From Auanema rhodensis (taxonomy: Eukaryota > Animalia > Nematoda): 64,000 nucleotides of DNA. Positions within the stretch are counted from its first letter, which is position 1, and each line of letters begins with the position of its first letter. The stretch spans positions 10,540,001-10,604,000 of the forward strand of contig OZ059895.1 in NCBI GenBank assembly GCA_964057225.1, written 5' to 3'. A program made the position numbers and the translations under genes. This document shows, piece by piece, positions 24,129 through 53,800 of the stretch. Below the pieces are notes generated by a model. The model was not told the origin of the DNA. It saw nothing but the letters and a program-made list of their open reading frames with translations, and ran no database searches.

Positions 24129-24129
24129 T

Positions 24130-27100: not shown

Positions 27101-27420
27101 TCCTAGAAAAACGTGCTACATCTCATTAAACTAAGAATTAGTTGATTGAAAAGGCAAAACAAATTTTGTTAGCACAGAACCATATTAATCATATTTTCCG
27201 GCGGGCTCAAGTTGCTATTTTGTTCGATTTTCATGAAAAAATAAAAGTTTTAAAATGTTTATTTTTAGCCCTAGAAATACGTGCAACATCTTATTATCTA
27301 AGAAAATTTGAAAATTAAATAATTGAAAAAGTAAAACAGATTTTGTTAGCCCAGAAACATATTAATCTTATTTTAAGGCGGGCTCAAGTTGCTATTTTGT
27401 TCGATTTTCATGAAAAAATA
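24130..27420 (+). repeat. Partial tandem duplication, period 2055 bp (12 monomers)
   Basis: GCAATATCTT (AATAT at 24201/26256), the A11 tract variant, and TAATCTTATTT (25311/27366) all recur at +2055. Confidence 0.85.
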
Positions 27421-33712: not shown

Positions 33713-36700
33713 ACTCAACTCAAAATCAACTGTTTGATAATATAAATTAGGTTTTGTGAGCATATATCCATAGCAATCATGTTTTGCGGCGGGTTCAACT
33801 TGCTATTTCGTTTGATTTTTATGAAAAATTAAATATTCTAAAAATTTTATTTCTTGTCCTAGAAATACGTGCTACATCTCATTAAACTTAGAATTAGTTG
33901 ATTGAAAAGGCAAAACAAATTTTGTGAGCATATACCCAGAGTAATCATGTTTTGCGGCGTGCTCAAGTTGCTATTTTGTTCGATTTTTATGAAAAATTAA
34001 ATATTTTCAAATGTTTATTTTTAGCCCTAGAAATACGTGCAACATCTTATTCAACTCAAAATCAACTGTTTGATAATATAAATTAGGTTTTGTGAGCATA
34101 TATCCATAGTAATCATGTTTTGCGGCGGGTTCAACTTGCTATTTCGTTTGATTTTTATGAAAAATTAAATATTTTAAAAATTTTATTTCTTGTCCTAGAA
34201 ATACGTGCTACATCTCATTAAACTAAGAATTAGTTGATTGAGAAGGCAAAACAAATTTTGTTAGCACAGAACCATATTAATCATATTTTCCGGCGGGCTC
34301 AAGTTTCTATTTTGTTCGATTTTCATGAAAAAATAAAAATTTTAAAATGTTTATTTTTAGCCTCAGAAATACGTGCAACATCTTATTATCTGAGAAAATT
34401 TGAAAATTAAATGATTGAAAAAGTAAAACAGATTTTGTTAGCACAGAAACATATTAATCATATTTTAATTTAAGGCGGGCTCAAGTTGCTATTTTGTTCG
34501 ATTTTCATGAAAAAATAAAAATTTTAAAATGTTTATTTTTAGCCCTAGAAATACGTGCAACATCTTACTCAACTCAAAATCAACTGTTTGATAATATAAA
34601 TTAGGTTTTGTGAGCATATATCCATAGCAATCATGTTTTGTGGCGGGTTCAACTTGCTATTTCGTTTGATTTTTATGAAAAATTAAATATTCTAAAACTT
34701 TTATTTCTTGTCCTAGAAGTACGTGCTACATCTCATTGAACTAAGAATTAGTTGATTGAGAAAACAAAACAAATTTTGTTAGCACAGAACCATATTAATC
34801 ATATTTTCCGGCGGGCTCAAGTTGCTATTTTCTTCGATTTTCATGAAAAAATAAAAATTTTAAAATTTTTATTTTTAGCCCTAGAAATACGTGCAACATC
34901 TTATTATCTAAGAAAATTTGAAAATTAAATAATTGAAAAAGTAAAACAGATTTTGTTAGCACAGAAACATATTAATCATATTTTAAGGTGGGCTCAAGTT
35001 GCTATTTTGTTCGATTTTCATGAAAAAATAAAAATTTTAAAATGTTTATTTTTAGCCCTAGTAATACGTGCAACATCTTACTCAACTCAAAATTAACTGT
35101 TTGATAATATAAATTAGGTTTTGTGAGCATATATCCATAGCAATCATGTTTTGCGGCGGGTTCAACTTGCTATTTCGTTTGATTTTTATGAAAAATTAAA
35201 TATTCTAAAAATTTTATTTCTTGTCCTAGAAATACGTGCTACATCTCATTAAACTAAGAATTAGTTGATTGAGGAGGCAAAACAGATTTTGTTAGCAGAG
35301 AAACATATTAATCATATTTTGAGGCGGGCTCAATTTGCTATTTTGTTCGATTTTCATGAAAAAATAAAAATTTTAAAATGTTTATTTTTAGCCCTAGAAA
35401 TACGTGCAACATCTTACTCAACTCAAAATCAACTGTTTAATAATATAATTTAGGTTTTGTGAGCATATATCCATAGCAATCATGTTTTGCGGCGGGTTCA
35501 ACTTGCTATTTCGTTTGATTTTTATGAAAAATTAAATATTCTAAAAATTTTATTTCTTGTCCTAGAAATACGTGCTACATCTCATTAAACTAAGAATTAG
35601 TTGATTGAGGAGGCAAAACAAATTTTGTTAGCACAGAACCGTATTAATCATATTTTCCGGCGGGCTCAAGTTGCTATTTTGCTCGATTTTCATGAAAAAA
35701 TAAAAATTTTAAAATGTTTATTTTTAGCCTTAGAAATACGTGCAACATCTTACTCAACTCAAAATCAACTGTTTGATAATATAAATTAGGTTTTGTGAGC
35801 ATATATCCATAGTTATCATGTTTTGCGGCGGGTTCAACTTGCTATTTCGTTTGATTTTTATGAAAAATTAAATATTCTAAAAATTTTATTTCTTGTCCTT
35901 GAAATACGTGCTACATCTCTTTGAACTAAGAATTAGTTGATTGAGAAGGCAAAACAAATTTTGTTAGCACAGAACCATATTAATCATATTTTCCGGCGGG
36001 CTTAAGTTGCTATTTTGTTCGATTTTCATGAAAAAATAAAAATTTTTAAATGTTTATTTTTAGCCCTAGAAATACGTGCAACATCTTATTATCTAAAAAA
36101 ATTTGAAAATGAAATAATTGAAAAAGTAAAACAGATTTTGTTAGCACAGAAACATATTAATCATATTTTAAGGCGGGCTCAAGTTGCTATTTTGTTCGAT
36201 TTTCATGAAAAAATAAAAATTTTAAAATGTTTATTTTTAGCCCTAGTAATACGTGCAACATCTTACTCAACTCAAAATTAACTGTTTGATAATATAAATT
36301 AGGTTTTGTGAGCATATATCCATAGCAATCATGTTTTGCGGCGGGTTCAACTTGCTATTTCGTTTGATTTTTATGAAAAATTAAATATTCTAAAAATTTT
36401 ATTTCTTGTCCTAGAAATACGTGCTACATCTCATTAAACTAAGAATTAGTTGATTGAGAAGGCAAAACAAATTTTGTTAGCACAGAACCATATTAATCAT
36501 ATTTTCCGGCGGGCTCAAGTTGCTATTTTGTTCGATTTTCATGAAAAAATAAAAATTTTAAAATGTTTATTTCTAACCCTAGAAATACGTGCAACATCTT
36601 ATTATCTAAGAAAATTTGAAAATGAAAAAATTGAAAAAGTAAAACAGATTTTGTTAGCACAGAAACATATTAATCATATTTTAAGGTGGGCTCAAGTTGC

Positions 36701-39038
36701 TATTTTGTTCGATTTTCATGAAAAAATAAAAATTTTAAAATGTTTATTTTTAGCCCTAGTAATACGTGCAACATCTTACTCAACTCAAAATTAACTGTTT
36801 GATAATATAAATTAGGTTTTGTGAGCATATATCCATAGCAATCATGTTTTGCGGCGGGTTCAACTTGCTATTTCGTTTGATTTTTATGAAAAATTAAATA
36901 TTCTAAAAATTTTATTTCTTGTCCTAGAAATACGTGCTACATCTCATTAAACTAAGAATTAGTTGATTGAGGAGGCAAAACAAATTTTGTTAGCACAGAA
37001 CCGTATTAATCATATTTTCCGGCGGGCTCAAGTTGCTATTTTGCTCGATTTTCATGAAAAAATAAAAATTTTAAAATGTTTATTTTTAGCCCTAGAAATA
37101 CGTGCAACATCTTACTCAACTCAAAATCAACTGTTTGATAATATAAATTAGGTTTTGTGAGCATATATCCATAGTAATCATGTTTTGCGGCGGGTTCAAC
37201 TTGCTATTTCGTTTGATTTTTATGAAAAATTAAATATTCTAAAAATTTTATTTCTTGTCCTAGAAATACGTACTACATCTCTTTGAACTAAGAATTAGTT
37301 GATTGAGAAGGCAAAACAAATTTTGTTAGCACAGAACCATATTAATCATATTTTCCGGCGGGCTTAAGTTGCTATTTTGTTCGATTTTCATGAAAAAATA
37401 AAAATTTTTAAATGTTTATTTTTTGCCCTAGAAATACGTGCAACATCTTATTATCTAAGAAAAATTGAAAATTAAATGATTGAAAAAGTAAAACAGATTT
37501 TGTTAGCATAGAAACATATTAATCATATTTTAAGGCGGGCTCAAGTTGCTATTTTGTTCGATTTTCATGAAAAAATAAAAATTTTTAAATGTTTATTTTT
37601 AGCCCTAGAAATACGTGCAACATCTTACTCAACTCAAAATTAACTGTTTGATAATATAAATTAGGTTTTGTGAGCATATATCCATAGTAATCATGTTTTG
37701 CGGCGGGTTCAACTTGCTATTTCGTTTGATTTTTATGAAAAATTAAATATTCTAAAACTTTTATTTCTTGTCCTAGAAATACGTGCAACATCTTACTCAA
37801 CTCAAAATCAACTGTTTGATAAAATAAATTAGGTTTTGTGAGCATATATCCATAGTTATCATGTTTTGCGGCGGGTTCAACTTGCTATTTCGTTTGATTT
37901 TTATGAAAAATTAAATATTCTAAAAATTTTATTTCTTGTCCTAGAAATACGTGCTACATCTCATTAAACTAAGAATTAGTTGATTGAGGAGGCAAAACAG
38001 ATTTTGTTAGCACAGAAACATATTAATCATATTTTAAGGCGGGCTCAAGTTGCTATTTTGTTCGATTTTCATGAAAAAATAAAAACTTTAAAATGTTTAT
38101 TTTCAGCCCTAGAAATACGTGCAACATCTTACTCAACTCAAAACTAACTGTTTGATGATATAAATTAGGTTTTGTGAGCATATATCCATAGTAATCATGT
38201 TTTGCGGCGGGTTCAACTTGCTATTTCGTTTGATTTTTATGAAAAATTAAATATTCTAAAACTTTTATTTCTTGTCCTAGAAATACGTGCTACATCTCAT
38301 TAAACTAAGAATTAGTTGATTGAGAAGGCAAAACAAATTTTGTTAGCACAGAACCATATTAATCATATTTTCCGGCGGGCTCAAGTTGCTATTTTGTTCG
38401 ATTTTCATGAAAAAATAAAAATTTTAAAATGTTTATTTTTAACCCTAGAAATACGTGCAACATCTTATTATCTAAGAAAATTTGAAAATTAAATAATTGA
38501 AAAAGTAAAACAGATTTTGTTAGCACAGAAACATATTGATCATATTTTAAGGCGGGCTCAAGTTGCTATTTTGTTCGATTTTCATGAAAAAATAAAAATT
38601 TTAAAATGTTTATTTTTAGCCCTAGAAATACGTGCAACATCTTACTCAACTCAAAATCAACTGTTTGATAATATAAATTAGGTTTTGTGAGCATATATCC
38701 ATAGTAATCATGTTTTGCGGCGGGTTCAACTTGCTATTTCGTTTGATTTTTATGAAAAATTAAATATTCTAAAAATTTTATTTCTTGTCCTAGAAATACG
38801 TGCTACATCTTATTAAACTAAGAATTAGTTGATTGAAAAGGCAAAACAAATTTTGTTAGCACAGAACCATATTAATCATATTTTCCGGCGGGCTCAAGTT
38901 GCTATTTTGTTCGATTTTCATGAAAAAATAAAAATTTTAAAATGTTTATTTTTAGCCCTAGAAATACGTGCAACATCTTATTATCTAAGAAAATTTGAAA
39001 ATTAAATAATTGAAAAAGGGAGCGAGGGACTCCAACAG

Positions 39039-42000
39039 TTGGTGAGTAAGCTGCGGGTTGAGAAAACGCAGTCCGTGCGCGTGTTGCATGAGGCAACGGC
39101 TCAGATGGAGCTACTTGAGAGCCGAGTAGCCACGCTTTCAGATGAAAACGCGCAACTCCAAGAGGAGACGCGTCGGTTAGCGCTAGAGCTGAAGGAGAAA
39201 GACGTAATAAGAGGTAGACGGGGTAGCCCAGAGTCGGCTACAACGAGCAGCACAGAGAGTGAAAGGACAGATCAGTTGTTCACAAGCCTCATGGCTCAGC
39301 TGAAAGAGTCTATGGAGAGGGCGTCAGTGACGCTGGAAGTGCAAGCAGTAAGGGCTAACGCCTTACCGGATCTAACAAAATTTAGGGGAGAGAGTCCAGC
39401 GGACTCACAGGTACTGGCTAAGCATATAGCAATTTTCAGAATGAAGTACCCACTCAGTGCGTTTAGTGAAGAGGAACGCTGCATTCTTTTCGAAGCCTCG
39501 CTCGAAGGCAAACCGTTGTCGGTGTTCCGGTCGGCTCCTGAAAGTACCTTGGAAGGTAAGCTAGTTTACCTAAAAGAGGCAATAAAAGGGCACGAAGGCG
39601 TGGCATTATGGAAGGCAGGGGAACAATTTGAGGCATTAAGAATGAAAGAGGGGCCGGGCAGAGTCAAACACTTCTGCTCGGAGATTGAAAGGCTGCACAA
39701 ACTGCTGTATCCGAAAATGACGGATGAGGACTCATCCTATTCGCTGACAACGCGCTTGTTTAAGGAAGTGAGAGACTGGCCCAACGCTGAAACAATGATA
39801 GCGAGGATAGCGGTCCTACCGAGGGCGCAATCCTATTCGGAACTAAAAGGTTGGGCACTCTTGCATACAAATCCGCGTTCTGGAGTCAGGCAGAGAGAGA
39901 GGAGACCTTGGCTACCACCAACGTCAGACGGGCCACCAGCTCAACCCCCGATGAAACAAGTAAAATGTTTCCAATGCAATGAGGTTGGACATGTAAAAAG
40001 AGCCTGCCCGAAGTTAAAAGTAGCAGCGGTGAGAGCCACAGTCTCAGAGAATAGCCAAGAGATCCCATTGAAGATAGGAGGGTCCTGGTTAGAAGAGGTC
40101 GCCCTGATGGAACAACGGATGAAGGCAGTGGTTGATAGCGGAGCACAGCTGACTATTCTCCCATCCTGGTTGCTCAAGACAGCTAACGCTAAGGAGTGGA
40201 TGAAGAACTATTCCGACACACCAACCATACAGTTGAGGTCGGTAGACCTTTCCACTTTGAAAGTAGAAAAGGTGGAAATCTGTCTGCGCCGCAGCAACAG
40301 GAAGGCGAGGGTATCGGTAGCTTTCATGGAGACCCCGCAAGCGATTCTGGGCTCTAATGCATTTGCCGCGCTGGGAATTCAGATGTGTCTGGAGGGAGAT
40401 CTCGCAAGGATCCAAGAGAGGTGCGTTATTCCTCCAGGCTGCTCTAAAATGGTCACAATTAGGGGCGCAGCTAAGCGCGCCCCATTTTTCAGTGAAGAGC
40501 CAGCAATACCAAGTACGGTAGGCGCACCGGCTGGTGAAACGCTGGAGATCCCTGTACACAATACAGGAATCGAACCGCTGTTATTTAAAAAATCCCAAGT
40601 AGTGGGATCATTCCTAGAGGAAGAGCCATCGGAGGATCTGGTGTGTCAGAGAGTTCAACTGTCCGATGAGGTTGAGTCGTCGGATACGACAGAACAGTTG
40701 AAAAAAATGGTTGAAACGGTCGATAGTTCGATCATAGACCAGGATAAGGTAAGAAGGTTGTTGAAGGATCATGAGTCCCTGTTCACGATGGGTGACAAGG
40801 ATTTACAGACGATGCTAGTACCTCCCGCTCCAATCGATACGGGAGACGCTGCTCCTATAGCACAGAGAGTGCGACCAGTCTCATTGGCAGTACAACGGGA
40901 GCTTGGAGCCATTTTAGACGATATGGAATCGTCAGGTATTACGGAGAGGTCGTCATCCAGTTGGGCGTCGCCACTAGTATTAGTGAGGAAACAAGACGGC
41001 TCACTGAGGGTTTGTGTAGATTATAGGGCATTAATTAAGGTACTAAGAAAGGACAAGTATCCTTTACCCAACGCCGAGTTAACATTACAGAGATTGGCGG
41101 GATTCTCTGTATTTAGCAGCATTGACTGTTTCCAGGGATTCTTCCAGATTCCGCTCGAACGATCAGCCAGGGAGAAGTCAGCGTTCGTAACGCACAAAGG
41201 ACTGTACCAATTTAAGAGGCTGCCCTTTGGACTTAGCAACAGTCCCTCGGTTTTTCAACGCTCCATGGACTTTATATTAAGTCATAGTAAGCTATGGGGT
41301 AAAGAGGTACACACATATGTCGACGATGTCATCATTAGCACGACAACAGTGGAGAGACATGTGGAAGTTCTGGGTGAAGTTTTTCAACTCTTCAAACGCT
41401 TTAGGGTATCACTAAAGCCAACCAAATGTAAATTGTTCAAAACAGAACTTAGATTTTTAGGGCATATAGTATCGGTTAAGGGTTTACGCACTGATCCTGA
41501 AAAAGTAAGAGCCATAACGGAGTACCCGGTACCCGCAAATCTTGCGGACCTCCGCACATTTTTAGGCATGATATCTTACCACCGGCGTTTTATACTGCAC
41601 TTTGCAGTAATCTCAAAGCCATTATATGCACTTACATCAACAAAAAAGGAGTGGGATTTTAATGGGGAATGCTTACAGGCATTCAATGAGTTGAAACGGA
41701 AGATGAGCTCAACACCCGTGTTACATCAACCTGACATTGAAGGAGCAAGAGATGGCTCCCGACCGATGATTCTATATACGGACGCAAGTTTGAAAGGTAC
41801 GGGCGCGGTGCTTACGCAAAAGCAGCAAGATGAGCTGTATCACCCGATTGCGTTTACATCGAGAGGATTGACGGAACACGAGGTAAGATATGCTATAACC
41901 GACCTTGAGGCATTAGCAATAGTTCATGCCTGTGAAAGGTTTCATGGATTTATATATGGCGTGCGTGTAATAGTAAGGACGGACCATTTACCTTTACTTA

Positions 42001-43517
42001 GCTTGTTTGCAAATAGTCAGACCTCGAATCGGGTTCTACGATGGGCCATTAAACTACGAACTTACGATTTGCAGATCGAGTATATAAAAGGACCGGCTAA
42101 TAGAGTAGCCGACGGCCTTAGCAGAGGGCCAGTTAACTGTAGGGAACAAATTCCCGAAAAAGAATTTAGATTTACAGAAGAAGTTGTAATTGGAAGAGTT
42201 CGTTTGGAACAAGAAGAGCAGGATGAATGGGTCTCAGCTTTGAGAGCAGACTCAGATTTTTCAACACTTCTTGAAAGGATGGACGAACCAAAAGAAACAG
42301 TTATCAGGTTAGGGGGAAAACGATTCCAACTAAAAGAATTTGTGGTAAGGCATGAGAAATTATACCACGTAACACCGAATGGTAAGGAACTTTTAGTTGT
42401 ACCAGTATCACAACGCGAAAAGTTAATAGCGGATACCCATGGAGGCATATGGGCGGGTCATCTAGGACCAGATAAGTTGTTGAAACAGTTGAGGGAAAAA
42501 TATTTTTGGTTAGGGATGGGCCCAGATATTATTGGATGGCATAAAAAATGCTTATCATGCTATTTAAACAATTACAAATCTCCAAATGTTCCACCTTTGA
42601 ACCCTATTTTGGTAACAAAACCATTTGACACGGTAGGAATGGATATAGTAGAGTTAAGAGTGTCTAGGAGGGGCAATCGATATGGTCTGGTGGTGGTCGA
42701 CTACTTCTCAAAATGGGCAGAGATTTATCCACTACCAAACAAATCAGCAGAACTCTGCGTTAAAACATTTTTAACAGGATGGATTGGATATGGGGCGCGA
42801 TTACCCACACGCATAATTTCTGATAACGGGTTAGAGTTTGACAATAAGTACTTCAAAGCTCTTTGTGATTTGCTACAAATAACATGGTGTCCGTCAAAGG
42901 CGTATAATCCCAGGGAAAATGGGTTGGCGGAAAGAACCCACCAGACAATTGTAGGGATGTTAAGAAAAAGCGATTGTGCTCGCTCAGACTGGGACACTAG
43001 ACTCCCACTTATTTTATATGGATATAATACAGCTGTGCATGAGAGAACAGGATTCTCACCTTATGAGTTGCTATATGGAACAACTCCTCGTTTATTTTCA
43101 GATTTTTTTTCCGAATCACATTTTCAGCTAATAGATTTGGACGCTTATCTATCAGAATTAAAAGAGGTTCTAAGTCGCTCTCACAAAGTTGCTATAGGTC
43201 ATGCACAAAAACAAGCAGAAATCATGAAATCTAGTTATGACGCGAAAAATAAAGTGTTGTCTTCGCATCACTTTAGGAAAGGCGAGGAAGTGTTCGTGAA
43301 AATATTGAACGAACTAGGTGCCCAAAGAAAACTAGGGCTTCCATATAAAGGGCCATTTACAGTAAAGGATGTGGCTAAAACATCAGTTCTTTTAGACTTA
43401 AATAAAAACCCTACTTGGGTACAGTCAGACTTGGTGGTTCCATCGAACGGTCAAAATGTGAACATCCCACAGAAATTAGCCCAGGGACGAAGGATTAGAG
43501 GGCGACCGAAGAAGTAG
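39039..43517 (+). CDS. Gag-Pol polyprotein (single frame, N-terminally truncated; first in-frame ATG at 39105)
   Basis: 1492 codons without stop or frameshift. Contains CX2CX4HX4C (39966-40007), protease VDSGA (DSG 40134-40142), RT WASPLVLV...DYR...LPFGL...YVDD (41316-41327), RNase H YTDAS/LEALA/TDH/ADGLSR, and integrase H-H-C-C with D,D(35)E-type core (GMDIV, ISDNG, GLAER) plus GPF. The listed start is a TTG, and the frame is open upstream to the satellite junction. Confidence 0.95.
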   Translation: MVSKLRVEKTQSVRVLHEATAQMELLESRVATLSDENAQLQEETRRLALELKEKDVIRGRRGSPESATTSSTESERTDQLFTSLMAQLKESMERASVTLEVQAVRANALPDLTKFRGESPADSQVLAKHIAIFRMKYPLSAFSEEERCILFEASLEGKPLSVFRSAPESTLEGKLVYLKEAIKGHEGVALWKAGEQFEALRMKEGPGRVKHFCSEIERLHKLLYPKMTDEDSSYSLTTRLFKEVRDWPNAETMIARIAVLPRAQSYSELKGWALLHTNPRSGVRQRERRPWLPPTSDGPPAQPPMKQVKCFQCNEVGHVKRACPKLKVAAVRATVSENSQEIPLKIGGSWLEEVALMEQRMKAVVDSGAQLTILPSWLLKTANAKEWMKNYSDTPTIQLRSVDLSTLKVEKVEICLRRSNRKARVSVAFMETPQAILGSNAFAALGIQMCLEGDLARIQERCVIPPGCSKMVTIRGAAKRAPFFSEEPAIPSTVGAPAGETLEIPVHNTGIEPLLFKKSQVVGSFLEEEPSEDLVCQRVQLSDEVESSDTTEQLKKMVETVDSSIIDQDKVRRLLKDHESLFTMGDKDLQTMLVPPAPIDTGDAAPIAQRVRPVSLAVQRELGAILDDMESSGITERSSSSWASPLVLVRKQDGSLRVCVDYRALIKVLRKDKYPLPNAELTLQRLAGFSVFSSIDCFQGFFQIPLERSAREKSAFVTHKGLYQFKRLPFGLSNSPSVFQRSMDFILSHSKLWGKEVHTYVDDVIISTTTVERHVEVLGEVFQLFKRFRVSLKPTKCKLFKTELRFLGHIVSVKGLRTDPEKVRAITEYPVPANLADLRTFLGMISYHRRFILHFAVISKPLYALTSTKKEWDFNGECLQAFNELKRKMSSTPVLHQPDIEGARDGSRPMILYTDASLKGTGAVLTQKQQDELYHPIAFTSRGLTEHEVRYAITDLEALAIVHACERFHGFIYGVRVIVRTDHLPLLSLFANSQTSNRVLRWAIKLRTYDLQIEYIKGPANRVADGLSRGPVNCREQIPEKEFRFTEEVVIGRVRLEQEEQDEWVSALRADSDFSTLLERMDEPKETVIRLGGKRFQLKEFVVRHEKLYHVTPNGKELLVVPVSQREKLIADTHGGIWAGHLGPDKLLKQLREKYFWLGMGPDIIGWHKKCLSCYLNNYKSPNVPPLNPILVTKPFDTVGMDIVELRVSRRGNRYGLVVVDYFSKWAEIYPLPNKSAELCVKTFLTGWIGYGARLPTRIISDNGLEFDNKYFKALCDLLQITWCPSKAYNPRENGLAERTHQTIVGMLRKSDCARSDWDTRLPLILYGYNTAVHERTGFSPYELLYGTTPRLFSDFFSESHFQLIDLDAYLSELKEVLSRSHKVAIGHAQKQAEIMKSSYDAKNKVLSSHHFRKGEEVFVKILNELGAQRKLGLPYKGPFTVKDVAKTSVLLDLNKNPTWVQSDLVVPSNGQNVNIPQKLAQGRRIRGRPKK
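39966..40007 (+). other. Gag nucleocapsid zinc knuckle (CCHC)
   Basis: CFQCNEVGHVKRAC = C-X2-C-X4-H-X4-C. Confidence 0.93.
40080..40400 (+). other. Retropepsin aspartic protease domain (approximate limits)
   Basis: AVVDSGAQLTIL active-site motif and downstream ILGSN motif. Confidence 0.85.
40833..42128 (+). other. Reverse transcriptase plus RNase H domains (approximate limits)
   Basis: IDTGDAAPI, SSWASPLVLVRKQDGSLRVCVDYR, SIDCFQGFFQI, LPFGLSNSPSVFQ, YVDD, KC, FLGH, then TDAS, E, TDH and ADGLSR. Confidence 0.95.
42330..43514 (+). other. Integrase (HHCC zinc domain, DDE core, GPY/F module, basic C-terminal tail)
   Basis: THGGIWAGH...CLSC, PFDTVGMD, VDYFSKW, ISDNGLEF, NGLAER, YNT..H..TGFSPYELLYG, YKGPF (43344-43358). 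No chromodomain: the protein stops about 50 aa after GPF. Confidence 0.92.
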
Positions 43518-43804
43518 AGTATATCCTAAGATTTTTTTTTCATTTCGTGTCGTTGTAATATAATCTTTGTGTTTGGATGGTATGAGTAACTTTGTTTTGT
43601 TGAAGAGCGAGAGGCTTTTGTCAAGTATGGCCAGCTATCACATAGAGGTGTAGCTTCACACTTGAGTATTACCCCATAAGTCAACAGGTTAGTCTAGGAT
43701 CTCCTGGACACTGTACGTCTTATTAGAGGTAATAGCTACTAGCATTTTCTTTTAATGTAGTCAAGCCAGCTCAAAGGGGCTTGAGCATTTTGTTCCCCCC
43801 GAGA

Positions 43805-44159
43805 TGTCACATAGTTATCATTCATACTGTAATACACATTGAGTTATAGTCTAGGAAATCTATAGTTATAGTTAAGACCTACTTTTTGATCTATAATAGT
43901 TAAGTGGTGCGTGAGACTTAACGAAGAATATAGTTCTTTTTGGTGTTGAATAAGACTTGTTGTCCTGGCTCGGACGTTCTATATTTTTATAGTGTTGAGT
44001 TTCTATCGACATTAGCTTTGGTAGCTATATCGATATAGTTAGTATATTTATTTCTGTTCGTCTTGTTGATTATTTGTTGTTTTAGTAAAGACTCTTTTTG
44101 TATTTTGGACTTAGTGATTAAAAGAAAGTGAACCTTTTGATATTCGTTACGCTTTCGCA
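43805..44159 (+). repeat. Probable 3' LTR (about 355 bp, TG...CA)
   Basis: Non-coding AT-rich segment after pol. It ends in CA exactly where satellite resumes. Candidate start TGTCAC at 43805, TATAA at 43892, ATTAAA at 44117-44122. The 3' end is fairly well supported; the 5' end is inferred because no second LTR is available for comparison. Confidence 0.6.
44117..44122 (+). promoter_or_regulatory. Candidate polyadenylation signal (ATTAAA) in the LTR
   Basis: Common variant hexamer 37 bp upstream of the element's 3' end. Position is plausible, but such motifs are frequent in AT-rich DNA. Confidence 0.35.
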
Positions 44160-44239
44160 TTTGATTTTTATGAAAAATTAAATATTCTAAAATTTTTATT
44201 TCTTGTCCTAGAAATACGTGCTACATCTCATTAAACTAA

Positions 44240-47200
44240 GAATTAGTTGATTGAAAAGGCAAAACAAATTTTGTTAGCACAGAACCATATTAATCATATT
44301 TTCCGGCGGGCTCAAGTTGCTATTTTGTTCGATTTTCATGAAAAAATAAAAATTTTAAAATGTTTATTTTTAGCCCTAGAAATACGTGCAACATCTTATT
44401 ATCTAAGAAAATTTGAAAATTAAATAATTGAAAAAGTAAAACAGATTTTGTTAGCACAGAAACATATTAATCATATTTTAAGGCGGGCTCAAGTTGCTAT
44501 TTTGTTCGATTTTCATGAAAAAATAAAAATTTTAAAATGTTTATTTTTAGCCCTAGAAATACGTGCAACATCTTACTCAACTCAAAATCAACTGTTTAAT
44601 AATATAATTTAGGTTTTGTGAGCATATATCCATAGCAATCATGTTTTGCGGCGGGTTCAACTTGCTATTTCGTTTGATTTTTATGAAAAACTAAATATTC
44701 TAAAAATTTTATTTCTTGTTCTAGAAATACGTGCTACATCTCATTAAACTAAGAATTAGTTGATTGAGGAGGCAAAACAAATTTTGTTAGCACAGAACCA
44801 TATTAATCATATTTTAAGGCGCGCTCAAGTTGCTATTTTGTTCGATTTTCATGAAAAAATAAAAATTTTAAAATGTTTATTTTTAGCCCTAGAAATACGT
44901 GCAACATCTTATTATCTAAGAGAATTTGAAAATTAAAAAATTGAAAAAGTAAAACAGATTTTGTTAGCACAGAAACATATTAATCATATTTTAAGGCGGG
45001 CTCAAGTTGCTATTTTGTTCGATTTTCATAAAAAAATAAAAATTTTAAAATGTTTATTTTTAGCCCTAGAAATACGTGCAACATCTTACTCAACTCAAAA
45101 TCAACTGTTTAATAATATAATTTAGGTTTTGTGAGCATATATCCATAGCAATCATGTTTTGCGGCGGGTTCAACTTGCTATTTCGTTTGATTTTTATGAA
45201 AAATTAAATATTCTAAAAATTTTATTTCTTGTCCTAGAAATACGTGCTACATCTCATTAAACTAAGAATTAGTTGATTGAGGAGGCAAAACAAATTTTGT
45301 TAGCACAGAACCATATTAATCATATTTTAAGGCGCGCTCAAGTTGCTATTTTGTTCGATTTTCATGAAAAAATAAAAATTTTAAAATGTTTATTTTTAGC
45401 CCTAGAAATACGTGCAACATCTTATTATCTAAGAGAATTTGAAAATTAAAAAATTGAAAAAGTAAAACAGATTTTGTTAGCACAGAAACATATTAATCAT
45501 ATTTTAAGGCGGGCTCAAGTTGCTATTTTGTTCGATTTTCATAAAAAAATAAAAATTTTAAAATGTTTATTTTTAGCCCTAGAAATACGTGCAACATCTT
45601 ACTCAACTCAAAATCAACTGTTTGATAATATAAACTAGGTTTTGTGAGCATATATCCATAGTAATCATGTTTTGCGGCGGGTTCAACTTGCTATTTCGTT
45701 TGATTTTTATGAAAAAAAATAATATTCTAAAAATTTTATTTCTTGTCCTAGAAATACGTGCTACATCTCATTAAACTAAGAATTAGTTGATTGAGGAGGC
45801 AAAACAAATTTTGTTAGCACAGAACCATATTAATCATATTTTCCGGCGGGCTCAAGTTGCTATTTTGTTCGATTTTCATGAAAAAATAAAAATTTTAAAA
45901 TGTTTATTTTTAGCCCTAGAAATACGTGCAACATCTTATTATCTAAGAAAATTTGAAAATTAAATAATTGAAAAAGTAAAACAGATTTTGTTAGCACAGA
46001 AACATATTAATCATATTTTAAGGCGGGCTCAAGTTGCTATTTTGTTCGATTTTCATGAAAAAATAAAAATTTTAAAATGTTTATTTTTAGCCCTAGAAAT
46101 ACGTGCAACATCTTATTATCTAAGAAAATTTGAAAATTAAATAATTGAAAAAGTAAAACAGATTTTGTAAGCATATATCCATAGTAATCATGTTTTGCGG
46201 CGGGCTCTACTTGCTATTTCGTTTGATTTTCATGAAAAATTAAATATTCTAAAAATTTTATTTCTTGTCCTAGAACTACGTGCTACATCTCATTAAACTG
46301 AGAATTAGTTGATTGAAGAAGCAAAACAAATTTTGTTAGCACAGAACCATATTAATCATATTTTACGGCGGGCTCAAGTTGCTATTTTGTTCGATTTTTA
46401 TGAAAAATTAAAAATTTTAAAATGTTTATTTTTAGCCCTAGAAATACGTGCAACACCTTATTAAACTCAAAATCGACTGTTTGATAATTTAAATTTGGTT
46501 TTGTAAGCATATATCCATAGTAATCATGTTTTGCGGCGGGCTCAACTTGCTATTTCGTTTGATTTTCATGAAAAATTAAATATTCTAAAAATTTTATTTT
46601 TTGTCCTAGAACTACGTGCTACATCTCATTAAACTAAGAATTAGTTGATTGAAGAAGCAAAACAAATTTTGTTAGCACAGAACCATATTAATCATATTTT
46701 ACGGCGGGCTCAAGTTGCTATTTTGTTCGATTTTTATGAAAAATTAAAAATTTTTAAATGTTTATTTTTAGCCCTAGAAATACGTGCAACATCTTATTAA
46801 ACTCAAAATCGACTGTTTGATATTTTAAATTTAGTTTCGTAAGCATATATCCATAGTAATCATGTTTTGCGGCGGGCTCTACTTGCTATTTCGTTTGATT
46901 TTCATGAAAAATTAAATATTCTAAAAATTTTATTTCTTGTCCTAGAACTACGTGCTACATCTCATTAAACTAAGAATTAGTTAATTAAAGAGCTAAAACA
47001 AATTTTGTTAGCACAGAACCATATTAATCATATTTTCCGGCGCGCTCAAATTGCTATTTTGTTCGATTTTTATGAAAAATTAAAAATTTTAAAATGTTTA
47101 TTTTTTAGCAATAGAAATACGTACATCATCTTATTCAACTCAAAATCGATTGTTTGATAATATAAATTAGGTTTTGTAAGCATATATCCATAGTAATCAT

Positions 47201-50200
47201 GTTTTGCGGCTGGTTCAACTTGCTATTTCGTTTGATTTTATGAAAAACCAAATTTTTAAAATGTTTATTTTTAGCCCTAGAAATACGTGCAACATCTTAT
47301 TCATTTCAAAGTTGACTTTTTGATAATATAAATTTGGTTTTGTAAGCATATATCCATAGTAATCATGTTTTGCGGCGGGCTCAACTTGCTATTTCGTTTG
47401 ATTTTATGAAAAACCAAATTTTTAAAATGTTTATTTTTAGCCCTAGAAATACGTGCAACATCTTATTCATTTCAAAGTTGACTTTTTGATAATATAAATT
47501 TGGTTTTGTAAGCATATATCAATAGTAATCATGTTTTGCGGCGGGCTCAACTTGCTATTTCGTTTGATTTTTATGAAAAATTAAATATTCTAAAAATTTT
47601 ATTTCTTGTCGGAGAAGTACGTGCTACATCTCATTTAAGTAAGACTTAGTTGATTGAGAAGGCAAAACAAATTTTGTTAGCACAGAACCATATTAATCAT
47701 ATTTTCCGGCGGGCTCAAGTTGCTATTTTGTTCGATTTTCATGAAAAAATAAAAATTTTAAAATGTTTATTTTTAGCCCTAGAAATACGTGCAACATCTT
47801 ATTATCTAAGAAAATTTGAAAATTAAATAATTGAAAAAGTAAAACAGATTTTGTTAGCACAGAAACATATTAATCATATTTTAAGGCGGGCTCAAGTTGC
47901 TATTTTGTTCGATTTTCATGAAAAAATAAAAATTTTAAAATGTTTATTTTTAGCCCTAGAAATACGTGCAACATCTTACTCAACTCAAAATCAACTGTTT
48001 AATAATATAATTTAGGTTTTGTGAGCATATATCCATAGCAATCATGTTTTGCGGCGGGTTCAACTTGCTATTTCGTTTGATTTTTATGAAAAACTAAATA
48101 TTCTAAAAATTTTATTTCTTGTTCTAGAAATACGTGCTACATCTCATTAAACTAAGAATTAGTTGATTGAGGAGGCAAAACAAATTTTGTTAGCACAGAA
48201 CCATATTAATCATATTTTAAGGCGCGCTCAAGTTGCTATTTTGTTCGATTTTCATAAAAAAATAAAAATTTTAAAATGTTTATTTTTAGCCCTAGAAATA
48301 CGTGCAACATCTTACTCAACTCAAAATCAACTGTTTAATAATATAATTTAGGTTTTGTGAGCATATATCCATAGCAATCATGTTTTGCGGCGGGTTCAAC
48401 TTGCTATTTCGTTTGATTTTTATGAAAAATTAAATATTCTAAAAATTTTATTTCTTGTCCTAGAAATACGTGCTACATCTCATTAAACTAAGAATTAGTT
48501 GATTGAGGAGGCAAAACAAATTTTGTTAGCACAGAACCATATTAATCATATTTTAAGGCGCGCTCAAGTTGCTATTTTGTTCGATTTTCATGAAAAAATA
48601 AAAATTTTAAAATGTTTATTTTTAGCCCTAGAAATACGTGCAACATCTTATTATCTAAGAGAATTTGAAAATTAAAAAATTGAAAAAGTAAAACAGATTT
48701 TGTTAGCACAGAAACATATTAATCATATTTTAAGGCGGGCTCAAGTTGCTATTTTGTTCGATTTTCATAAAAAAATAAAAATTTTAAAATGTTTATTTTT
48801 AGCCCTAGAAATACGTGCAACATCTTACTCAACTCAAAATCAACTGTTTGATAATATAAACTAGGTTTTGTGAGCATATATCCATAGTAATCATGTTTTG
48901 CGGCGGGTTCAACTTGCTATTTCGTTTGATTTTTATGAAAAATTAAATATTCTAAAAATTTTATTTCTTGTCCTAGAAATACGTGCTACATCTCATTAAA
49001 CTAAGAATTAGTTGATTGAAAAGGCAAAACAAATTTTGTTAGCACAGAACCATATTAATCATATTTTCCGGCGGGCTCAAGTTGCTATTTTGTTCGATTT
49101 TCATGAAAAAATAAAAATTTTAAAATGTTTATTTTTAGCCCTAGAAATACGTGCAACATCTTATTATCTAAGAAAATTTGAAAATTAAATAATTGAAAAA
49201 GTAAAACAGATTTTGTTAGCACAGAAACATATTAATCATATTTTAAGGCGGGCTCAAGTTGCTATTTTGTTCGATTTTCATGAAAAAATAAAAATTTTAA
49301 AATGTTTATTTTTAGCCCTAGAAATACGTGCAACATCTTATTATCTAAGAAAATTTGAAAATTAAATAATTGAAAAAGTAAAACAGATTTTGTAAGCATA
49401 TATCCATAGTAATCATGTTTTGCGGCGGGCTCTACTTGCTATTTCGTTTGATTTTCATGAAAAATTAAATATTCTAAAAATTTTATTTCTTGTCCTAGAA
49501 CTACGTGCTACATCTCATTAAACTGAGAATTAGTTGATTGAAGAAGCAAAACAAATTTTGTTAGCACAGAACCATATTAATCATATTTTACGGCGGGCTC
49601 AAGTTGCTATTTTGTTCGATTTTTATGAAAAATTAAAAATTTTAAAATGTTTATTTTTAGCCCTAGAAATACGTGCAACACCTTATTAAACTCAAAATCG
49701 ACTGTTTGATAATTTAAATTTGGTTTTGTAAGCATATATCCATAGTAATCATGTTTTGCGGCGGGCTCAACTTGCTATTTCGTTTGATTTTCATGAAAAA
49801 TTAAATATTCTAAAAATTTTATTTTTTGTCCTAGAACTACGTGCTACATCTCATTAAACTAAGAATTAGTTGATTGAAGAAGCAAAACAAATTTTGTTAG
49901 CACAGAACCATATTAATCTTATTTTACGGCGGGCTCAAGTTGCTATTTTGTTCGATTTTTATGAAAAATTAAAAATTTTTAAATGTTTATTTTTAGCCCT
50001 AGAAATACGTGCAACATCTTATTAAACTCAAAATCGACTGTTTGATATTTTAAATTTAGTTTCGTAAGCATATATCCATAGTAATCATGTTTTGCGGCGG
50101 GCTCTACTTGCTATTTCGTTTGATTTTCATGAAAAATTAAATATTCTAAAAATTTTATTTCTTGTCCTAGAACTACGTGCTACATCTCATTAAACTAAGA

Positions 50201-50834
50201 ATTAGTTAATTAAAGAGCTAAAACAAATTTTGTTAGCACAGAACCATATTAATCATATTTTCCGGCGCGCTCAAATTGCTATTTTGTTCGATTTTTATGA
50301 AAAATTAAAAATTTTAAAATGTTTATTTTTAGCCCTAGAAATACGTACATCATCTTATTCAACTCAAAATCGATTGTTTGATAATTTAAATTTGGTTTTG
50401 TAAGCATATATCCATAGTAATCATGTTTTGCGGCTGGTTCAACTTGCTATTTCGTTTGATTTTATGAAAAACCAAATTTTTAAAATGTTTATTTTTAGCC
50501 CTAGAAATACGTGCAACATCTTATTCATTTCAAAGTTGACTTTTTGATAATATAAATTTGGTTTTGTAAGCATATATCCATAGTAATCATGTTTTGCGGC
50601 GGGCTCAACTTGCTATTTCGTTTGATTTTATGAAAAACCAAATTTTTAAAATGTTTATTTTTAGCCCTAGAAATACGTGCAACATCTTATTCATTTCAAA
50701 GTTGACTTTTTGATAATATAAATTTGGTTTTGTAAGCATATATCAATAGTAATCATGTTTTGCGGCGGGCTCAACTTGCTATTTCGTTTGATTTTTATGA
50801 AAAATTAAATATTCTAAAAATTTTATTTCTTGTC
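44240..50834 (+). repeat. About 3.4-kb tandem duplication spanning the subfamily boundary; second copy lacks one 177-bp monomer
   Basis: GAAAAACTAAAT/GTTCTAG at 44691/48094 (+3403). Hybrid junction GATTTTGTAAGC at 46161/49386 (+3225 = 3403 - 177 - 1). Confidence 0.85.
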
Positions 50835-53800
50835 CTAGAACTACGTGCTACATCTCATTAAACTAAGAATTAGTTAATTAAAGAGCTAAAACAAATTTTG
50901 TTAGCACAGAACCATATTAATCATATTTTCCGGCGGGCTCAAGTTGCTATTTTGTTCGATTTTTATGAAAAATTAAAAATTTTAAAATGTTTATTTTTAG
51001 CCCTAGAAATACGTGCAACACCTTATTAAACTCAAAATCGACTGTTTGATAATTTAAATTTGGTTTTGTAAGCATATATCCATAGTAATCATGTTTTGCG
51101 GCGGGCTCAACTTGCTATTTCGTTTGATTTTTATGAAAAATTAAATATTCTAAAAATTTTATTTCTTGTCCTAGAAATACGTGCTACATCTCATTAAACT
51201 AAGAATTAGTTGATTGAAAAGGCAAAACAAATTTGTTAACACAGAACCATATTAATCATATTTTCCGGCGGGCTAAAGTTGCTATTTTGTTCGATTTTCA
51301 TGAAAAAATAAAAATTTTAAAATGTTTATTTTTAGCCTCAGAAATACGTGCAACATCTTATTATCTAAGAAAATTTGAAAATTAAATAATTGAAAAAGTA
51401 AAACCGATTTTGTTAGCCCAGAAACATATTAATCATATTTTATATTTTACGGCGGGCTCAAGTTGCTATTTTGTTCGATTTTCATGAAAAAATAAAAATT
51501 TTAAAATGTTTATTTTTAGCCCTAGAAATACGTGCAACATCTTATTCATTTCAAAGTTGACTTTTTGATAATATAAATTTGGTTTTATAAGCATATATCA
51601 ATAGTAATCATGTTTTGCGGCGGGTTCCACTTGCTATTTCGTTTGATTTTTATGAAAAATTAAATATTCTAAAAATTTTATTTCTTGTCCGAGAAGTACG
51701 TGCTACATCTCATTTAAGTAAGACTTAGTTGATTGAGAAGGCAAAACAAATTTTGTTAGCACAGAACCATATTAATCATATTTTCCGGCGGGCTAAAGTT
51801 GCTATTTTGTTCGATTTTCATGAAAAAATAAAAATTTTAAAATGTTTATTTTTAGCCTCAGAAATACGTGCAACATCTTATTATCTAAGAAAATTTGAAA
51901 ATTAAATAATTGAAAAAGTAAAACCGATTTTGTTAGCCCAGAAACATATTAATCATATTTTATATTTTACGGCGGGCTCAAGTTGCTATTTTGTTCGATT
52001 TTCATGAAAAAATAAAAATTTTAAAATGTTTATTTTTAGCCCTAGAAATACGTGCAACACCTTATTAAACTCAAAATCGACTGTTTGATAATTTAAATTT
52101 GGTTTTGTAAGCATATATCCATAGTAATCATGTTTTGCGGCGGGCTCAACTTGCTATTTCGTTTGATTTTCATGAAAAATTAAATATTCTAAAAATTTTA
52201 TTTCTTGTCCTAGAACTACGTGCTACATCTCATTAAACTAAGAATTAGTTGATTGAAGAAGCAAAACAAATTTTGTTAGCACAGAACCATATTAATCATA
52301 TTTTCCGGCGCGCTCAAGTTGCTATTTTGTTCGATTTTTATGAAAAATAAAAATGTTTAAAATGTTTATTTTTAGCCCTAGAAATACGTGCATCATCATA
52401 TTCAACTTAAAATCGACTGTTTGATAATTTAAATTTGGTTTTGTAAGCATATATCCATAGTAATCATGTTTTGCGGCGGGCTCTACTTGCTATTTCGTTT
52501 GATTTTCATGAAAAATTAAATATTCTAAAAATATTATTTCTTGTCCTAGAACTACGTGCTACATCTCATTAAACTAAGAATTAGTTAATTAAAGAGCTAA
52601 AACAAATTTTGTTAGCACAGAACCATATTAATCATATTTTACGGCGGGCTCAAGTTGCTATTTTGTTCGATTTTTATGAAAAATTAAAAATTTTAAAATG
52701 TTTATTTTTAGCCCTAAAAATACGTGCAACACCTTATTAAACTCAAAATCGACTGTTTGATAATTTAAATTTGGTTTTGTAAGCATATATCCATAGTAAT
52801 CATGTTTTGCGGCGGGCTCAACTTGCTATTTCGTTTGATTTTCATGAAAAATTAAATATTCTAAAAATTTTATTTCTTGTCCTAGAACTACGTGCTACAT
52901 CTCATTAAACTGAGAATTAGTTGATTGAAGAAGCAAAACAAATTTTGTTAGCACAGAACCATATTAATCATATTTTACGGCGGGCTCAAGTTGCTATTTT
53001 GTTCGATTTTTATGAAAAATTAAAAATTTTAAAATGTTTATTTTTAGCCCTAGAAATACGTGCAACACCTTATTAAACTCAAAATCGACTGTTTGATAAT
53101 TTAAATTTGGTTTTGTAAGCATATATCCATAGTAATCATGTTTTGCGGCGGGCTCAACTTGCTATTTCGTTTGATTTTCATGAAAAATTAAATATTCTAA
53201 AAATTTTATTTCTTGTCCTAGAACTACGTGCTACATCTCATTAAACTAAGAATTAGTTGATTGAAGAAGCAAAACAAATTTTGTTAGCACAGAACCATAT
53301 TAATCATATTTTACGGCGGGCTCAAGTTGCTATTTTGTTCGATTTTTATGAAAAATTAAAAATTTTTAAATGTTTATTTTTAGCCCTAGAAATACGTGCA
53401 ACATCTTATTAAACTCAAAATCGACTGTTTGATATTTTAAATTTGGTTTCGTAAGCATATATCCATAGTAATCATGTTTTGCGGCGGGCTCTACTTGCTA
53501 TTTCGTTTGATTTTCATGAAAAATTAAATATTCTAAAAATTTTATTTCTTGTCCTAGAACTACGTGCTACATCTCATTAAACTAAGAATTAGTTAATTAA
53601 AGAGCTAAAACAAATTTTGTTAGCACAGAACCATATTAATCATATTTTCCGGCGCGCTCAAATTGCTATTTTGTTCGATTTTTATGAAAAATTAAAAATT
53701 TTAAAATGTTTATTTTTTAGCAATAGAAATACGTACATCATCTTATTCAACTCAAAATCGATTGTTTGATAATATAAATTAGGTTTTGTAAGCATATATC

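What the first reader, a model, noticed from the sequence alone, without database searches (positions are those of the whole stretch)
43488..43517. Integrase ends in an AT-hook-like motif: candidate satellite-targeting retrotransposon
Seen: the last residues of Pol are GRRIRGRPKK-stop (RGRP at 43497-43508). They follow the GPF module and a short linker, and no chromodomain is present. Established: R-G-R-P flanked by K/R is the AT-hook core (HMGA type) that binds the minor groove of AT tracts, and the post-GPY/F tail of Ty3/Gypsy integrases is where targeting modules such as the chromodomain or CR motif sit. Seen: this copy lies inside a satellite dominated by A/T tracts and resumes at TTTGATTTTTATGAAAAA. 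Inference: the family may use an AT-hook to tether integration to AT-rich satellite or heterochromatin, a chromodomain-independent niche-targeting system. One insertion cannot prove targeting, and the motif could simply be a nuclear or nucleolar localisation signal.
Basis: partly seen in the sequence, partly recalled or inferred. Interest (0 to 1): 0.8.

Follow-up and report, generated by a model that had tools for sequence, protein, structure and literature searches.

The report
AT-hook-like tail on nematode retrotransposon integrase
A jumping gene in a roundworm satellite repeat ends its integrase in a short, evolutionarily conserved motif identical to the core of a known AT-rich-DNA-binding "hook"; the motif is real and under selection, but it does not by itself explain why these elements live in satellites.

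Summary
Pol ends ...LAQGRRIRGRPKK-stop, with RGRP at 43497-43508, on an unstructured 23-residue tail behind the SH3-like GPF module. There is no chromodomain.

The motif is not chance:
- RGRP sits in the same alignment column in four other lineages of this genome, down to 40% integrase identity. Every codon shows synonymous changes.
- It also occurs in strongylid relatives. Eight of the nine RGRP occurrences in 113 public relatives lie at this tail position.

The copy comes from a true integration into the 168-bp, 27% GC satellite. Its 3' junction and a 5' LTR junction elsewhere on the contig share a 4-bp duplication, TTTG. At least four independent hook-clade insertions lie in this satellite family, and others lie in three further AT-rich repeats.

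Targeting by the hook is not shown:
- The hookless sister clade sits just as exclusively in a 351-bp satellite.
- The genome matches the Auanema rhodense germline assembly, of which 61% is eliminated DNA, mostly tandem repeats.
- The hook-bearing strongylid relatives I examined lie in ordinary DNA.
- All relatives carry some basic patch at this position, so a nuclear localisation signal remains a live rival.

First-stage note s1-404689 flagged an integrase AT-hook on another piece of this genome.

The parts
1..39017 (.). Upstream satellite array: 168/177-bp units, about 27% GC, higher-order unit about 513 bp. An intact copy of the target TTTG lies at 38742-38745.
39018..44159 (+). 5'-truncated Ty3/gypsy-type LTR retrotransposon (5142 bp). 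It lacks the 5' LTR and the 407-nt leader. Its 5' junction with the satellite was not made by integrase.
39039..43517 (+). Open Gag-Pol reading frame (1492 codons plus stop). The Gag N-terminus is missing.
39963..40013 (+). Gag CCHC zinc knuckle
40095..40382 (+). Aspartic protease
   Evidence: below Pfam's cut-off; three related models agree
40983..41471 (+). Reverse transcriptase (RVT_1)
41664..42065 (+). RNase H
42399..42575 (+). Integrase H2C2 zinc-binding domain
42615..42911 (+). Integrase catalytic core (rve)
43287..43445 (+). SH3-like beta-barrel holding the GPF module (GPF at 43350-43358)
   Evidence: (AlphaFold2 strands at piece residues 117-169)
43446..43514 (+). Unstructured 23-residue integrase tail
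   Evidence: no secondary structure; mean pLDDT of the last two 10-residue blocks 50 and 62
43485..43514 (+). AT-hook-like motif G-R-R-I-R-G-R-P-K-K (RGRP at 43497-43508); stop codon at 43515-43517
43518..43804 (+). 3' untranslated region between the Pol stop and the LTR
   Evidence: LTR matches start at query base 288
43805..44159 (+). 3' LTR, 355 bp, TG...CA. It is 99.7-100% identical to 5' LTRs at C3:10237280 and C3:10290467.
44160..44163 (.). Target-site duplication TTTG. Its partner precedes the 5' LTR at C3:10237280 and C3:10290467.
   Evidence: a contig of run X8 shows the TTTG|LTR junction
44160..64000 (.). Downstream satellite array. Its first 276 bp repeat 38742-39017.

Best explanation
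The window holds the 3' 5.1 kb of a young Ty3/gypsy-type LTR retrotransposon from a nematode-wide clade. Its own integrase inserted it, with a 4-bp duplication TTTG, into a 168-bp AT-rich satellite of what is most likely the germline-restricted central repeat block of an Auanema rhodense autosome. Array rearrangement later split and duplicated it. Pol ends in a flexible tail whose last ten residues carry a perfect AT-hook core. The motif is a selected, clade-stable feature of the integrase C-terminus (shown). Most likely (inferred) its R-G-R segment lies in the narrow minor groove of A/T tracts. That would raise the affinity of the integration complex for AT-rich target DNA, and the motif may also serve in nuclear import. 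It would then bias where integration lands within AT-rich DNA, but it is not what confines these elements to satellites. That confinement is shared with hookless relatives and other element classes in this genome. It probably reflects the low cost of landing in DNA that is discarded from body cells, or some other targeting cue.
For: Motif and position. Disordered tail behind an SH3-like barrel. The AT-hook is defined as the core (P)RGRP flanked by basic residues, with AATT a favoured site: PMC3353895. RGRP falls in the same alignment column in L012 (87% identity), L013 (51%), L014 (48%) and L016/L017 (40%). All four codons differ synonymously between lineages. The motif is clade-stable on trees that leave out the tail, and it also occurs in two strongylid clades covering Ancylostoma, Ostertagia, Nippostrongylus and Necator. 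Eight of 9 RGRP occurrences in 113 relatives lie at this position. It is kept in lineages whose ORF stops right after it (window, L012, L014, P0013). Canonical integration into the satellite. A 4-bp TSD is also seen in strongylid relatives. All eight hook-clade insertion events examined have very AT-rich flanks (19-30% GC) and seven lie in tandem repeats; four are in the 168-bp satellite family, and two of those lie 1 nt apart in opposite orientation beside an AAAAATTAAATATT tract. Precedents for targeting by integrase C-terminal tails (Ty5, MLV) and for AT-hooks tethering an integration complex through LEDGF: PMC4176367.
Against: No binding data exist. Pfam's AT_hook model gives no hit on the window tail and 11.9 bits (cut-off 17.4) on P0013. 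The hookless sister clade is flanked by a 351-bp satellite in 8 of 8 copies. The background is roughly 55-60% tandem repeat. Hook-bearing P0001, P0029 and P0023 lie in ordinary DNA of 33-49% GC. The homologous position is a basic patch in every relative, either RGRK(K/P) or KTKRK-type, which fits a nuclear localisation signal equally well. The difference in AT content between hook hosts (19-30% GC) and hookless hosts (31-33% GC) rests on a single phylogenetic contrast. The hot spot has p of about 0.04-0.1.
Confidence: 0.45

Rival explanations
1. The tail is a nuclear localisation signal or a generic basic patch with no role in target choice. Elements lie in satellites because insertions elsewhere are removed by selection, or because a different cue such as chromatin state directs them to DNA that is eliminated from body cells.
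For: Every relative has a basic patch at this position, and most lack RGRP. The hookless sister clade is equally confined to a satellite. About 61% of the genome is eliminated DNA, mostly repeats, and transposable-element genes concentrate there. Hook-bearing strongylid elements lie in ordinary DNA. From general knowledge, not tested here: the integrases of Ty1 and Ty3 carry C-terminal nuclear localisation signals.
Against: G and P are invariant across lineages at 40% identity while the neighbouring basic residues vary. L014 keeps GR..RGRP but has T-T in place of K-K. The window tail has no K-(K/R)-x-(K/R) match. The RGRP state is stable within clades across genera.
Confidence: 0.35
2. The motif is a docking site for something other than AT-rich DNA: an arginine anchor for the nucleosome acidic patch, a host chromatin protein, or RNA (an RG-type motif).
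For: A conserved short linear motif on a disordered integrase tail is also the format of the Ty5-Sir4 and MLV-BET tethers (PMC4176367). The wider pattern R-G-(K/R)-R-G-R is kept even where P is replaced by K.
Against: There is an exact match to the AT-hook core, and no partner is known. Nothing here points to a specific host protein.
Confidence: 0.1
3. The motif is a proteolytic processing site (R-x-x-R or R-x-K/R-R, proprotein-convertase type) at the boundary between integrase and the C-terminal extension present in many relatives.
For: In L013, L016/L017, P0001 and most strongylid relatives the ORF continues 250-600 residues after the motif. Nearly all variants fit R/K-x-x-R, and several fit R-x-K/R-R.
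Against: The motif is kept, with synonymous change, in lineages whose ORF ends 2-4 residues after it (window, L012, L014, P0013). Pol is cytoplasmic and convertases act in the secretory pathway (general knowledge). Conservation of G-R-P downstream of the supposed cut is left unexplained.
Confidence: 0.05
4. The motif is a chance run of basic residues, or a by-product of a purine-rich cis element such as the polypurine tract.
For: The codons are purine-rich.
Against: The LTR starts 287 nt downstream, so this is not the polypurine tract. The codons differ synonymously between lineages. Eight of 9 RGRP occurrences in relatives are at this position, against about 0.1 expected.
Confidence: 0.02

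Closest known systems
Chromodomain of chromoviruses (Ty3/gypsy integrase C-terminal module that directs integration to heterochromatin)
   Same: It is a module placed after the GPY/F part of a Ty3/gypsy integrase, and the elements reside in repeat-rich silent DNA.
   Different: The chromodomain is a folded domain of about 50 residues that reads histone marks. Here there is a 10-residue linear motif on a disordered tail, expected to contact DNA directly. Pfam finds no chromodomain.
Ty5 integrase targeting domain (6-residue motif binding Sir4) and the MLV integrase C-terminal tail binding BET proteins (PMC4176367)
   Same: Each is a short linear motif at the extreme integrase C-terminus that decides, or would decide, where integration occurs.
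   Different: Those motifs bind host proteins. This one matches a DNA minor-groove motif, and no host partner is implied or shown.
LEDGF/p75 tether of lentiviral integrase (PWWP domain, NLS and two AT-hooks; PMC4176367)
   Same: AT-hooks together with a basic NLS hold an integration complex on chromatin.
   Different: In lentiviruses the hooks belong to a host cofactor acting in trans. Here the hook is part of the integrase itself.
AT-hook-like GRRR/GRPR motif of Sleeping Beauty and Tc1 transposases (PMC7827188)
   Same: It is an AT-hook-type motif encoded by a transposable element.
   Different: It lies inside the N-terminal paired-like domain of a DNA transposase and helps recognise the transposon's own ends, not the target.
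HMGA AT-hooks (PMC3353895); from general knowledge also the satellite-binding multi-AT-hook protein D1 of Drosophila
   Same: The R-G-R-P core is identical, the flanks are basic and the context is disordered. AT-rich satellites are the natural high-density substrate.
   Different: There is a single hook rather than 3-10. The preceding residue is I/N/K/A/T rather than P or G. Binding is untested, and the Pfam model is not passed.

Membership tests
AT-hook motif (HMGA type; Pfam PF02178) | Core R-G-R-P | tested here: met
   RGRP at 43497-43508. The same column holds RGRP in L012, L013, L014, L016/17, P0001, P0013 and P0017.
AT-hook motif (HMGA type; Pfam PF02178) | Basic residues on both sides of the core (PMC3353895) | tested here: met
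   G-R-R-I before and K-K after in the window. L014 has only T-T after the core.
AT-hook motif (HMGA type; Pfam PF02178) | Score above Pfam's curated cut-off (17.4 bits) | tested here: not met
   No hit on the window tail, and 11.9 bits for P0013. The model has 13 positions, so a single hook rarely passes.
AT-hook motif (HMGA type; Pfam PF02178) | Lies in an intrinsically disordered segment | tested here: met
   AlphaFold2 gives no secondary structure after piece residue 177 of 192; mean pLDDT of the last two 10-residue blocks is 50 and 62.
AT-hook motif (HMGA type; Pfam PF02178) | Selective binding to the minor groove of A/T tracts | not testable with these tools
   Needs EMSA or anisotropy measurements with a minor-groove competitor.
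Ty3/gypsy (Metaviridae) LTR retrotransposon | Pol domain order PR-RT-RNase H-IN, with an H2C2 and rve integrase | tested here: met
Ty3/gypsy (Metaviridae) LTR retrotransposon | LTRs ending TG...CA and a short target-site duplication | tested here: met
   The 3' LTR is in the window, and matching 5' LTRs with the TTTG duplication lie at C3:10237280 and C3:10290467. The window copy itself has only the 3' LTR.
Ty3/gypsy (Metaviridae) LTR retrotransposon | GPY/F module after the integrase core | tested here: met
   KGPF at 43347-43358 inside a predicted SH3-like barrel.
Chromovirus | Chromodomain at the integrase C-terminus | tested here: not met
   No chromodomain hit at E up to 1. Only 23 residues follow the barrel.
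Classical monopartite NLS | K-(K/R)-x-(K/R) | tested here: inconclusive
   The window and L014 tails do not match. L013 (K-R-G-R) and most strongylid relatives do. Import cannot be tested here.
Proprotein-convertase cleavage site | R-x-(K/R)-R | tested here: inconclusive
   The window has only R-R-I-R (the minimal R-x-x-R). L013 has R-G-K-R. The motif persists where nothing follows it.

The most novel reading that the evidence does not exclude
A clade of nematode Ty3/gypsy elements carries its own AT-hook on the integrase tail. In Auanema this self-contained tether, which needs no host factor, steers integration into the most AT-rich germline-restricted satellites. Related families with other tail motifs use other satellites. 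Retrotransposon families would thus partition the DNA that the worm discards from its body cells according to what their integrase tails read.
Probability: 0.2. Interest if true: 0.8.

Novelty: new variant of a known kind. Interest (0 to 1): 0.5.

Why it matters
Integrase C-terminal modules are the best understood way in which retroelements choose where to land (chromodomain, Ty5-Sir4, MLV-BET, LEDGF). Three full-text searches found no paper describing a DNA-reading AT-hook built into the integrase itself. If it binds A/T tracts, it would be the simplest known tether and would need no host factor. It would also give a tractable handle on how retrotransposons colonise satellites in a genome that discards those satellites from body cells. 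The negative part matters too. In this genome, residence in a satellite is not evidence of targeting, because hookless relatives and other element classes show the same pattern.

Tried and rejected
- Polypurine-tract by-product: rejected. The LTR begins 287 nt after the stop codon, and the codons vary synonymously.
- Pfam AT_hook scan of the tails: no hit on the window tail and a sub-threshold hit on P0013.
- Word search restricted to Pol residues 1330-1492: nothing scored.
A whole-genome census of insertions was therefore not possible.
- Mapping the satellite by DNA search scored only 2 of 44 candidates. A 21-mer pattern count gave about 1365 exact hits. From this I estimate the 168-bp satellite at roughly 0.3% of the genome.
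- P0024 could not be located.
- The preprint's supplementary tables are not held, so I infer that the window lies in eliminated DNA from its central position on a 24.04-Mb contig and its repeat content. I did not read this from coordinates.
- Runs labelled RNA hold none of the stretch's words. This is no proof that the element is silent.
- The window-specific junction between satellite and truncated element at 39017/39018 is not among the contig pieces shown, so reads do not confirm it.
- The region of lower GC at 28-31 kb is a 177-bp variant of the satellite, not another insertion.
- Complex prediction was not used, because it cannot model DNA.
- The large representative protein search was not used, as the operators advised. 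The two word searches gave 113 relatives.
Full report
**What is in the window.** The window is almost entirely a tandem satellite of 168/177-bp units at about 27% GC, with a higher-order unit of about 513 bp. The only interruption is 39018-44159.

This stretch holds one open frame, 39039-43517. Pfam hits run in the order CCHC knuckle, aspartic protease, RVT_1, RNase H, integrase H2C2 and rve, with no chromodomain. The frame ends ...PQKLAQGRRIRGRPKK-stop. RGRP lies exactly at 43497-43508, and the G that opens the motif is at 43485, 3 nt before the stated start. GPF lies at 43350-43358.

An AlphaFold2 model of the last 192 residues was built on an 11-row alignment. It shows a five-strand SH3-like barrel at Pol residues about 1417-1469. 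After it there is essentially no secondary structure, and the last two 10-residue blocks have mean pLDDT of 50 and 62.

**The element and how it got there.** LTR matches elsewhere in the genome start at window base 43805. The 3' LTR is therefore 43805-44159 (355 bp, TG...CA), and 43518-43804 is untranslated. This rules out my first rival, that the purine-rich tail codons are the polypurine tract.

The window copy has no 5' LTR. Its 5' end abuts the satellite at an arbitrary point, and the 276 bp upstream (38742-39017) are repeated downstream (44160-44435).

At C3:10237280 and C3:10290467 lie 5' LTRs that are 99.7-100% identical. Each is followed by a 407-nt leader and the first 584 bp of the window element at 99.5-99.7% identity. 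Their upstream flank ends ...CGTTTG|TGTCACA, and the window's 3' junction reads ...TTTCGCA|TTTGATT.

These are the two ends of one canonical integration into the satellite, with a 4-bp duplication TTTG. Array rearrangement later split and duplicated it. Strongylid relatives also show 4-bp duplications.

Contigs from three independent studies carry the element. One run matches 3484 nt with no difference. One contig shows LTR, 404-nt leader and gag in order. One, from a sample with another organism label, shows the TTTG|LTR junction. Runs labelled RNA hold none of it.

**Which genome.** G000 has 180,911,798 bases. The 2026 preprint on that species reports a 180.9-Mb germline assembly. Its main points are:
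- About 61% of the genome is eliminated from body cells, and most of that DNA is tandem-repeat blocks with units of 167-504 nt.
- Each autosome has a central eliminated block with its own set of repeats.
- Genes with transposable-element domains are concentrated in the eliminated DNA.

The size match makes the identification likely, though it is not proof. Contig C3 is 24.04 Mb, so the window at 10.54-10.60 Mb is central. Every stretch I sampled between 10.18 and 10.60 Mb is mostly this satellite. Germline restriction of the window is thus inferred, not read from coordinates, because the preprint's supplement is not held.

A 21-mer of the satellite occurs about 1365 times in the genome. From this I estimate the satellite at roughly 0.3% of the genome. 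I found it on C3:10.18-10.66 Mb and near the right end of C8.

**Is the motif conserved?** A search of the window's own genome with the integrase found few close relatives. Reading each frame to its stop and aligning puts R-G-R-P in one column:

| Locus | Place | Integrase identity | Tail |
|---|---|---|---|
| window | C3:10.58 Mb | 100% | GRRIRGRPKK-stop |
| L012 | C8:4.02 Mb | 87% | GRRNRGRPKS-stop |
| L013 | C8:26.50 Mb | 51% | GRGKRGRPKKN, ORF goes on |
| L014 | C8:26.61 Mb | 48% | GRNARGRPTTGH-stop |
| L016/L017 | C1:13.1 and C4:11.7 Mb | 40% | GRRTRGRPRKD, ORF goes on |

The four core codons differ synonymously between lineages (AGA/CGA, GGG/GGT/GGA, CGA/CGT/AGG, CCG/CCA/CCT). Selection therefore acts on the protein. 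A sister clade at 36-38% identity has KKKRK or RRRRE at this position instead.

Among public proteins, the BLASTP alignment runs through RGRP in P0001 (Ancylostoma ceylanicum), P0013 and P0017. A second search from P0001 added P0023 (Ostertagia), P0024 (A. ceylanicum), P0029 (Nippostrongylus) and P0040 (Necator).

Of the nine RGRP occurrences in 174,485 residues of 113 relatives, eight lie at this tail position. About 0.1 would be expected there by composition.

On trees built without the tail columns the motif state is stable within clades:
- RGRP occurs in the Auanema hook clade and in two strongylid clades.
- RGRK(K/P) occurs in a seven-member Haemonchus/Ancylostoma clade.
- KTKRK-type patches occur elsewhere.

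So the position always holds a basic patch, and about a quarter of the nematode-clade relatives (10 of 40) carry the exact AT-hook core. This matches the published definition: core (P)RGRP flanked by basic residues, with AATT a favoured site (PMC3353895). Pfam's short AT_hook model is not passed, with no hit on the window tail and 11.9 bits against a 17.4-bit cut-off on P0013.

**Does the hook go with satellites?** All eight hook-clade insertion events whose ends I could read have very AT-rich flanks, and seven lie in tandem repeats:
- the window family, in the 168-bp satellite;
- a second lineage whose LTR is 79-83% identical, with six copies that all share one junction and so count as one event, also in the 168-bp satellite;
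- L013 and L014, in the C8 version of the same satellite;
- L012, against a 29-bp repeat at 26% GC;
- L016, in a 173-bp satellite at 20% GC;
- L017, in a 167-bp satellite at about 22% GC;
- L020, in AT-rich DNA with no long repeat detected.

L016 and L017 are near-identical elements in different satellites on different contigs. The preference, if there is one, is therefore not for one sequence.

Within the 168-bp satellite, three of four events fall in the 32-bp stretch richest in A/T tracts. Two of them, the second lineage and L013, lie 1 nt apart in opposite orientation. The chance of such a close pair is about 0.04-0.1, which is suggestive only.

**The controls weaken the targeting claim.**
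- The hookless sister clade (L018, L022, L023, L026, L027, L029-L031) is flanked by a 351-bp satellite in eight of eight cases. Residence in satellites therefore does not need RGRP.
- More than half of this genome is tandem repeat, and earlier notes of the scan report DIRS, CR1 and other gypsy elements confined to satellites as well.
- Hook hosts are AT-richer than the hookless host: 19-30% against 31-33% GC, and 36-51% against 25-29% of bases in A/T runs of six or more. This rests on one phylogenetic contrast.
- In other species, hook-bearing P0001 lies between ordinary genes at 40-45% GC. P0029 and P0023 have flanks of 33-49% GC with no satellite, much like the hookless P0048, P0036 and P0033. 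The older of those assemblies may have collapsed their satellites, so this is weak counter-evidence.

**Reading.**
- Shown: a selected, clade-stable AT-hook-type motif on the disordered integrase tail, and true integrase-mediated insertion into AT-rich satellites, repeatedly.
- Inferred: the R-G-R segment contacts A/T-tract minor grooves and biases target capture.
- Not supported: that the motif is what confines the family to satellites.

The main rival is a nuclear localisation signal or generic basic patch, with the satellite location set by selection or another cue. The invariance of G and P, and L014's loss of the flanking lysines while it keeps GR..RGRP, argue for something more specific than charge.

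A processing-site reading (R-x-x-R at the boundary with the 250-600-residue extension present in many relatives, which has no Pfam domain) is unlikely. The motif persists where the ORF ends right after it.

**Novelty.** Three full-text searches found no paper describing an AT-hook in an LTR-retrotransposon integrase. The closest known cases are the chromodomain of chromoviruses, the Ty5 and MLV tail motifs, the AT-hooks of LEDGF acting in trans (PMC4176367) and the GRRR hook of Sleeping Beauty transposase (PMC7827188).

First-stage note s1-404689 flagged the same idea on another piece of this genome, without follow-up.

One bench step, rebuilding a full-length element for a transposition assay, is left to a person.

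Noticed in passing
G000:C3:10237280-10243583 (L043/L044) and its duplicate at C3:10290467 (L045/L046): A chimeric copy: the window family's 5' LTR, 407-nt leader and 584 bp of gag are joined to a different element whose Pol is only about 48% identical. That element is cut off by the satellite at Pol residue about 1436. The whole structure is duplicated 53 kb away.
   Followed up: partly
window 38742-39017 and 44160-44435: The 276 bp of satellite just upstream of the truncated element are repeated just downstream at about 98% identity, starting at the TTTG target. The 5' junction therefore came from a rearrangement inside the array, not from integration. The exact path is unexplained.
   Followed up: partly
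L018, L022, L023, L026, L027, L029-L031 with flanks L056-L059 (C1, C3, C5, C6, C8 and others): The sister clade of gypsy elements, which lacks RGRP, is flanked by a 351-bp satellite (31-33% GC) in all eight copies examined, at various phases. Different families seem to occupy different satellites.
   Followed up: partly
L016 (C1:13.1 Mb) and L017 (C4:11.7 Mb) with flanks L053 and L054: Near-identical hook-bearing elements, one with an 1872-codon open frame, sit in two different satellites (173 bp and 167 bp, about 20% GC) on two contigs. This points to recent activity.
   Followed up: partly
L041:6140-6563, repeated in L042 and L049: A 424-bp non-satellite fragment with no match to the elements studied lies 415 bp from each copy of the second-lineage fragment and was amplified together with it.
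   Followed up: no
L013:2700-3855, L016 (minus strand), and P0001 residues 1445-1853 with many strongylid relatives: In many relatives the ORF runs 250-600 residues beyond the hook. This extension has no Pfam domain but shows recurring His/Cys-containing patches. Its function is unknown, and an envelope-like role is only a guess.
   Followed up: partly
window 28000-31000: A stretch of slightly lower GC (24-25%) and reversed AT skew is a run of the 177-bp variant of the same satellite, not an insertion.
   Followed up: yes
G000:C8:4015101-4029640 (L050, L010, L012, L051): The 87%-identical copy is also 5'-truncated. It lies among three copies of a 1.6-kb repeat, each of which begins with a 29-bp AT-rich minisatellite.
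   Followed up: partly
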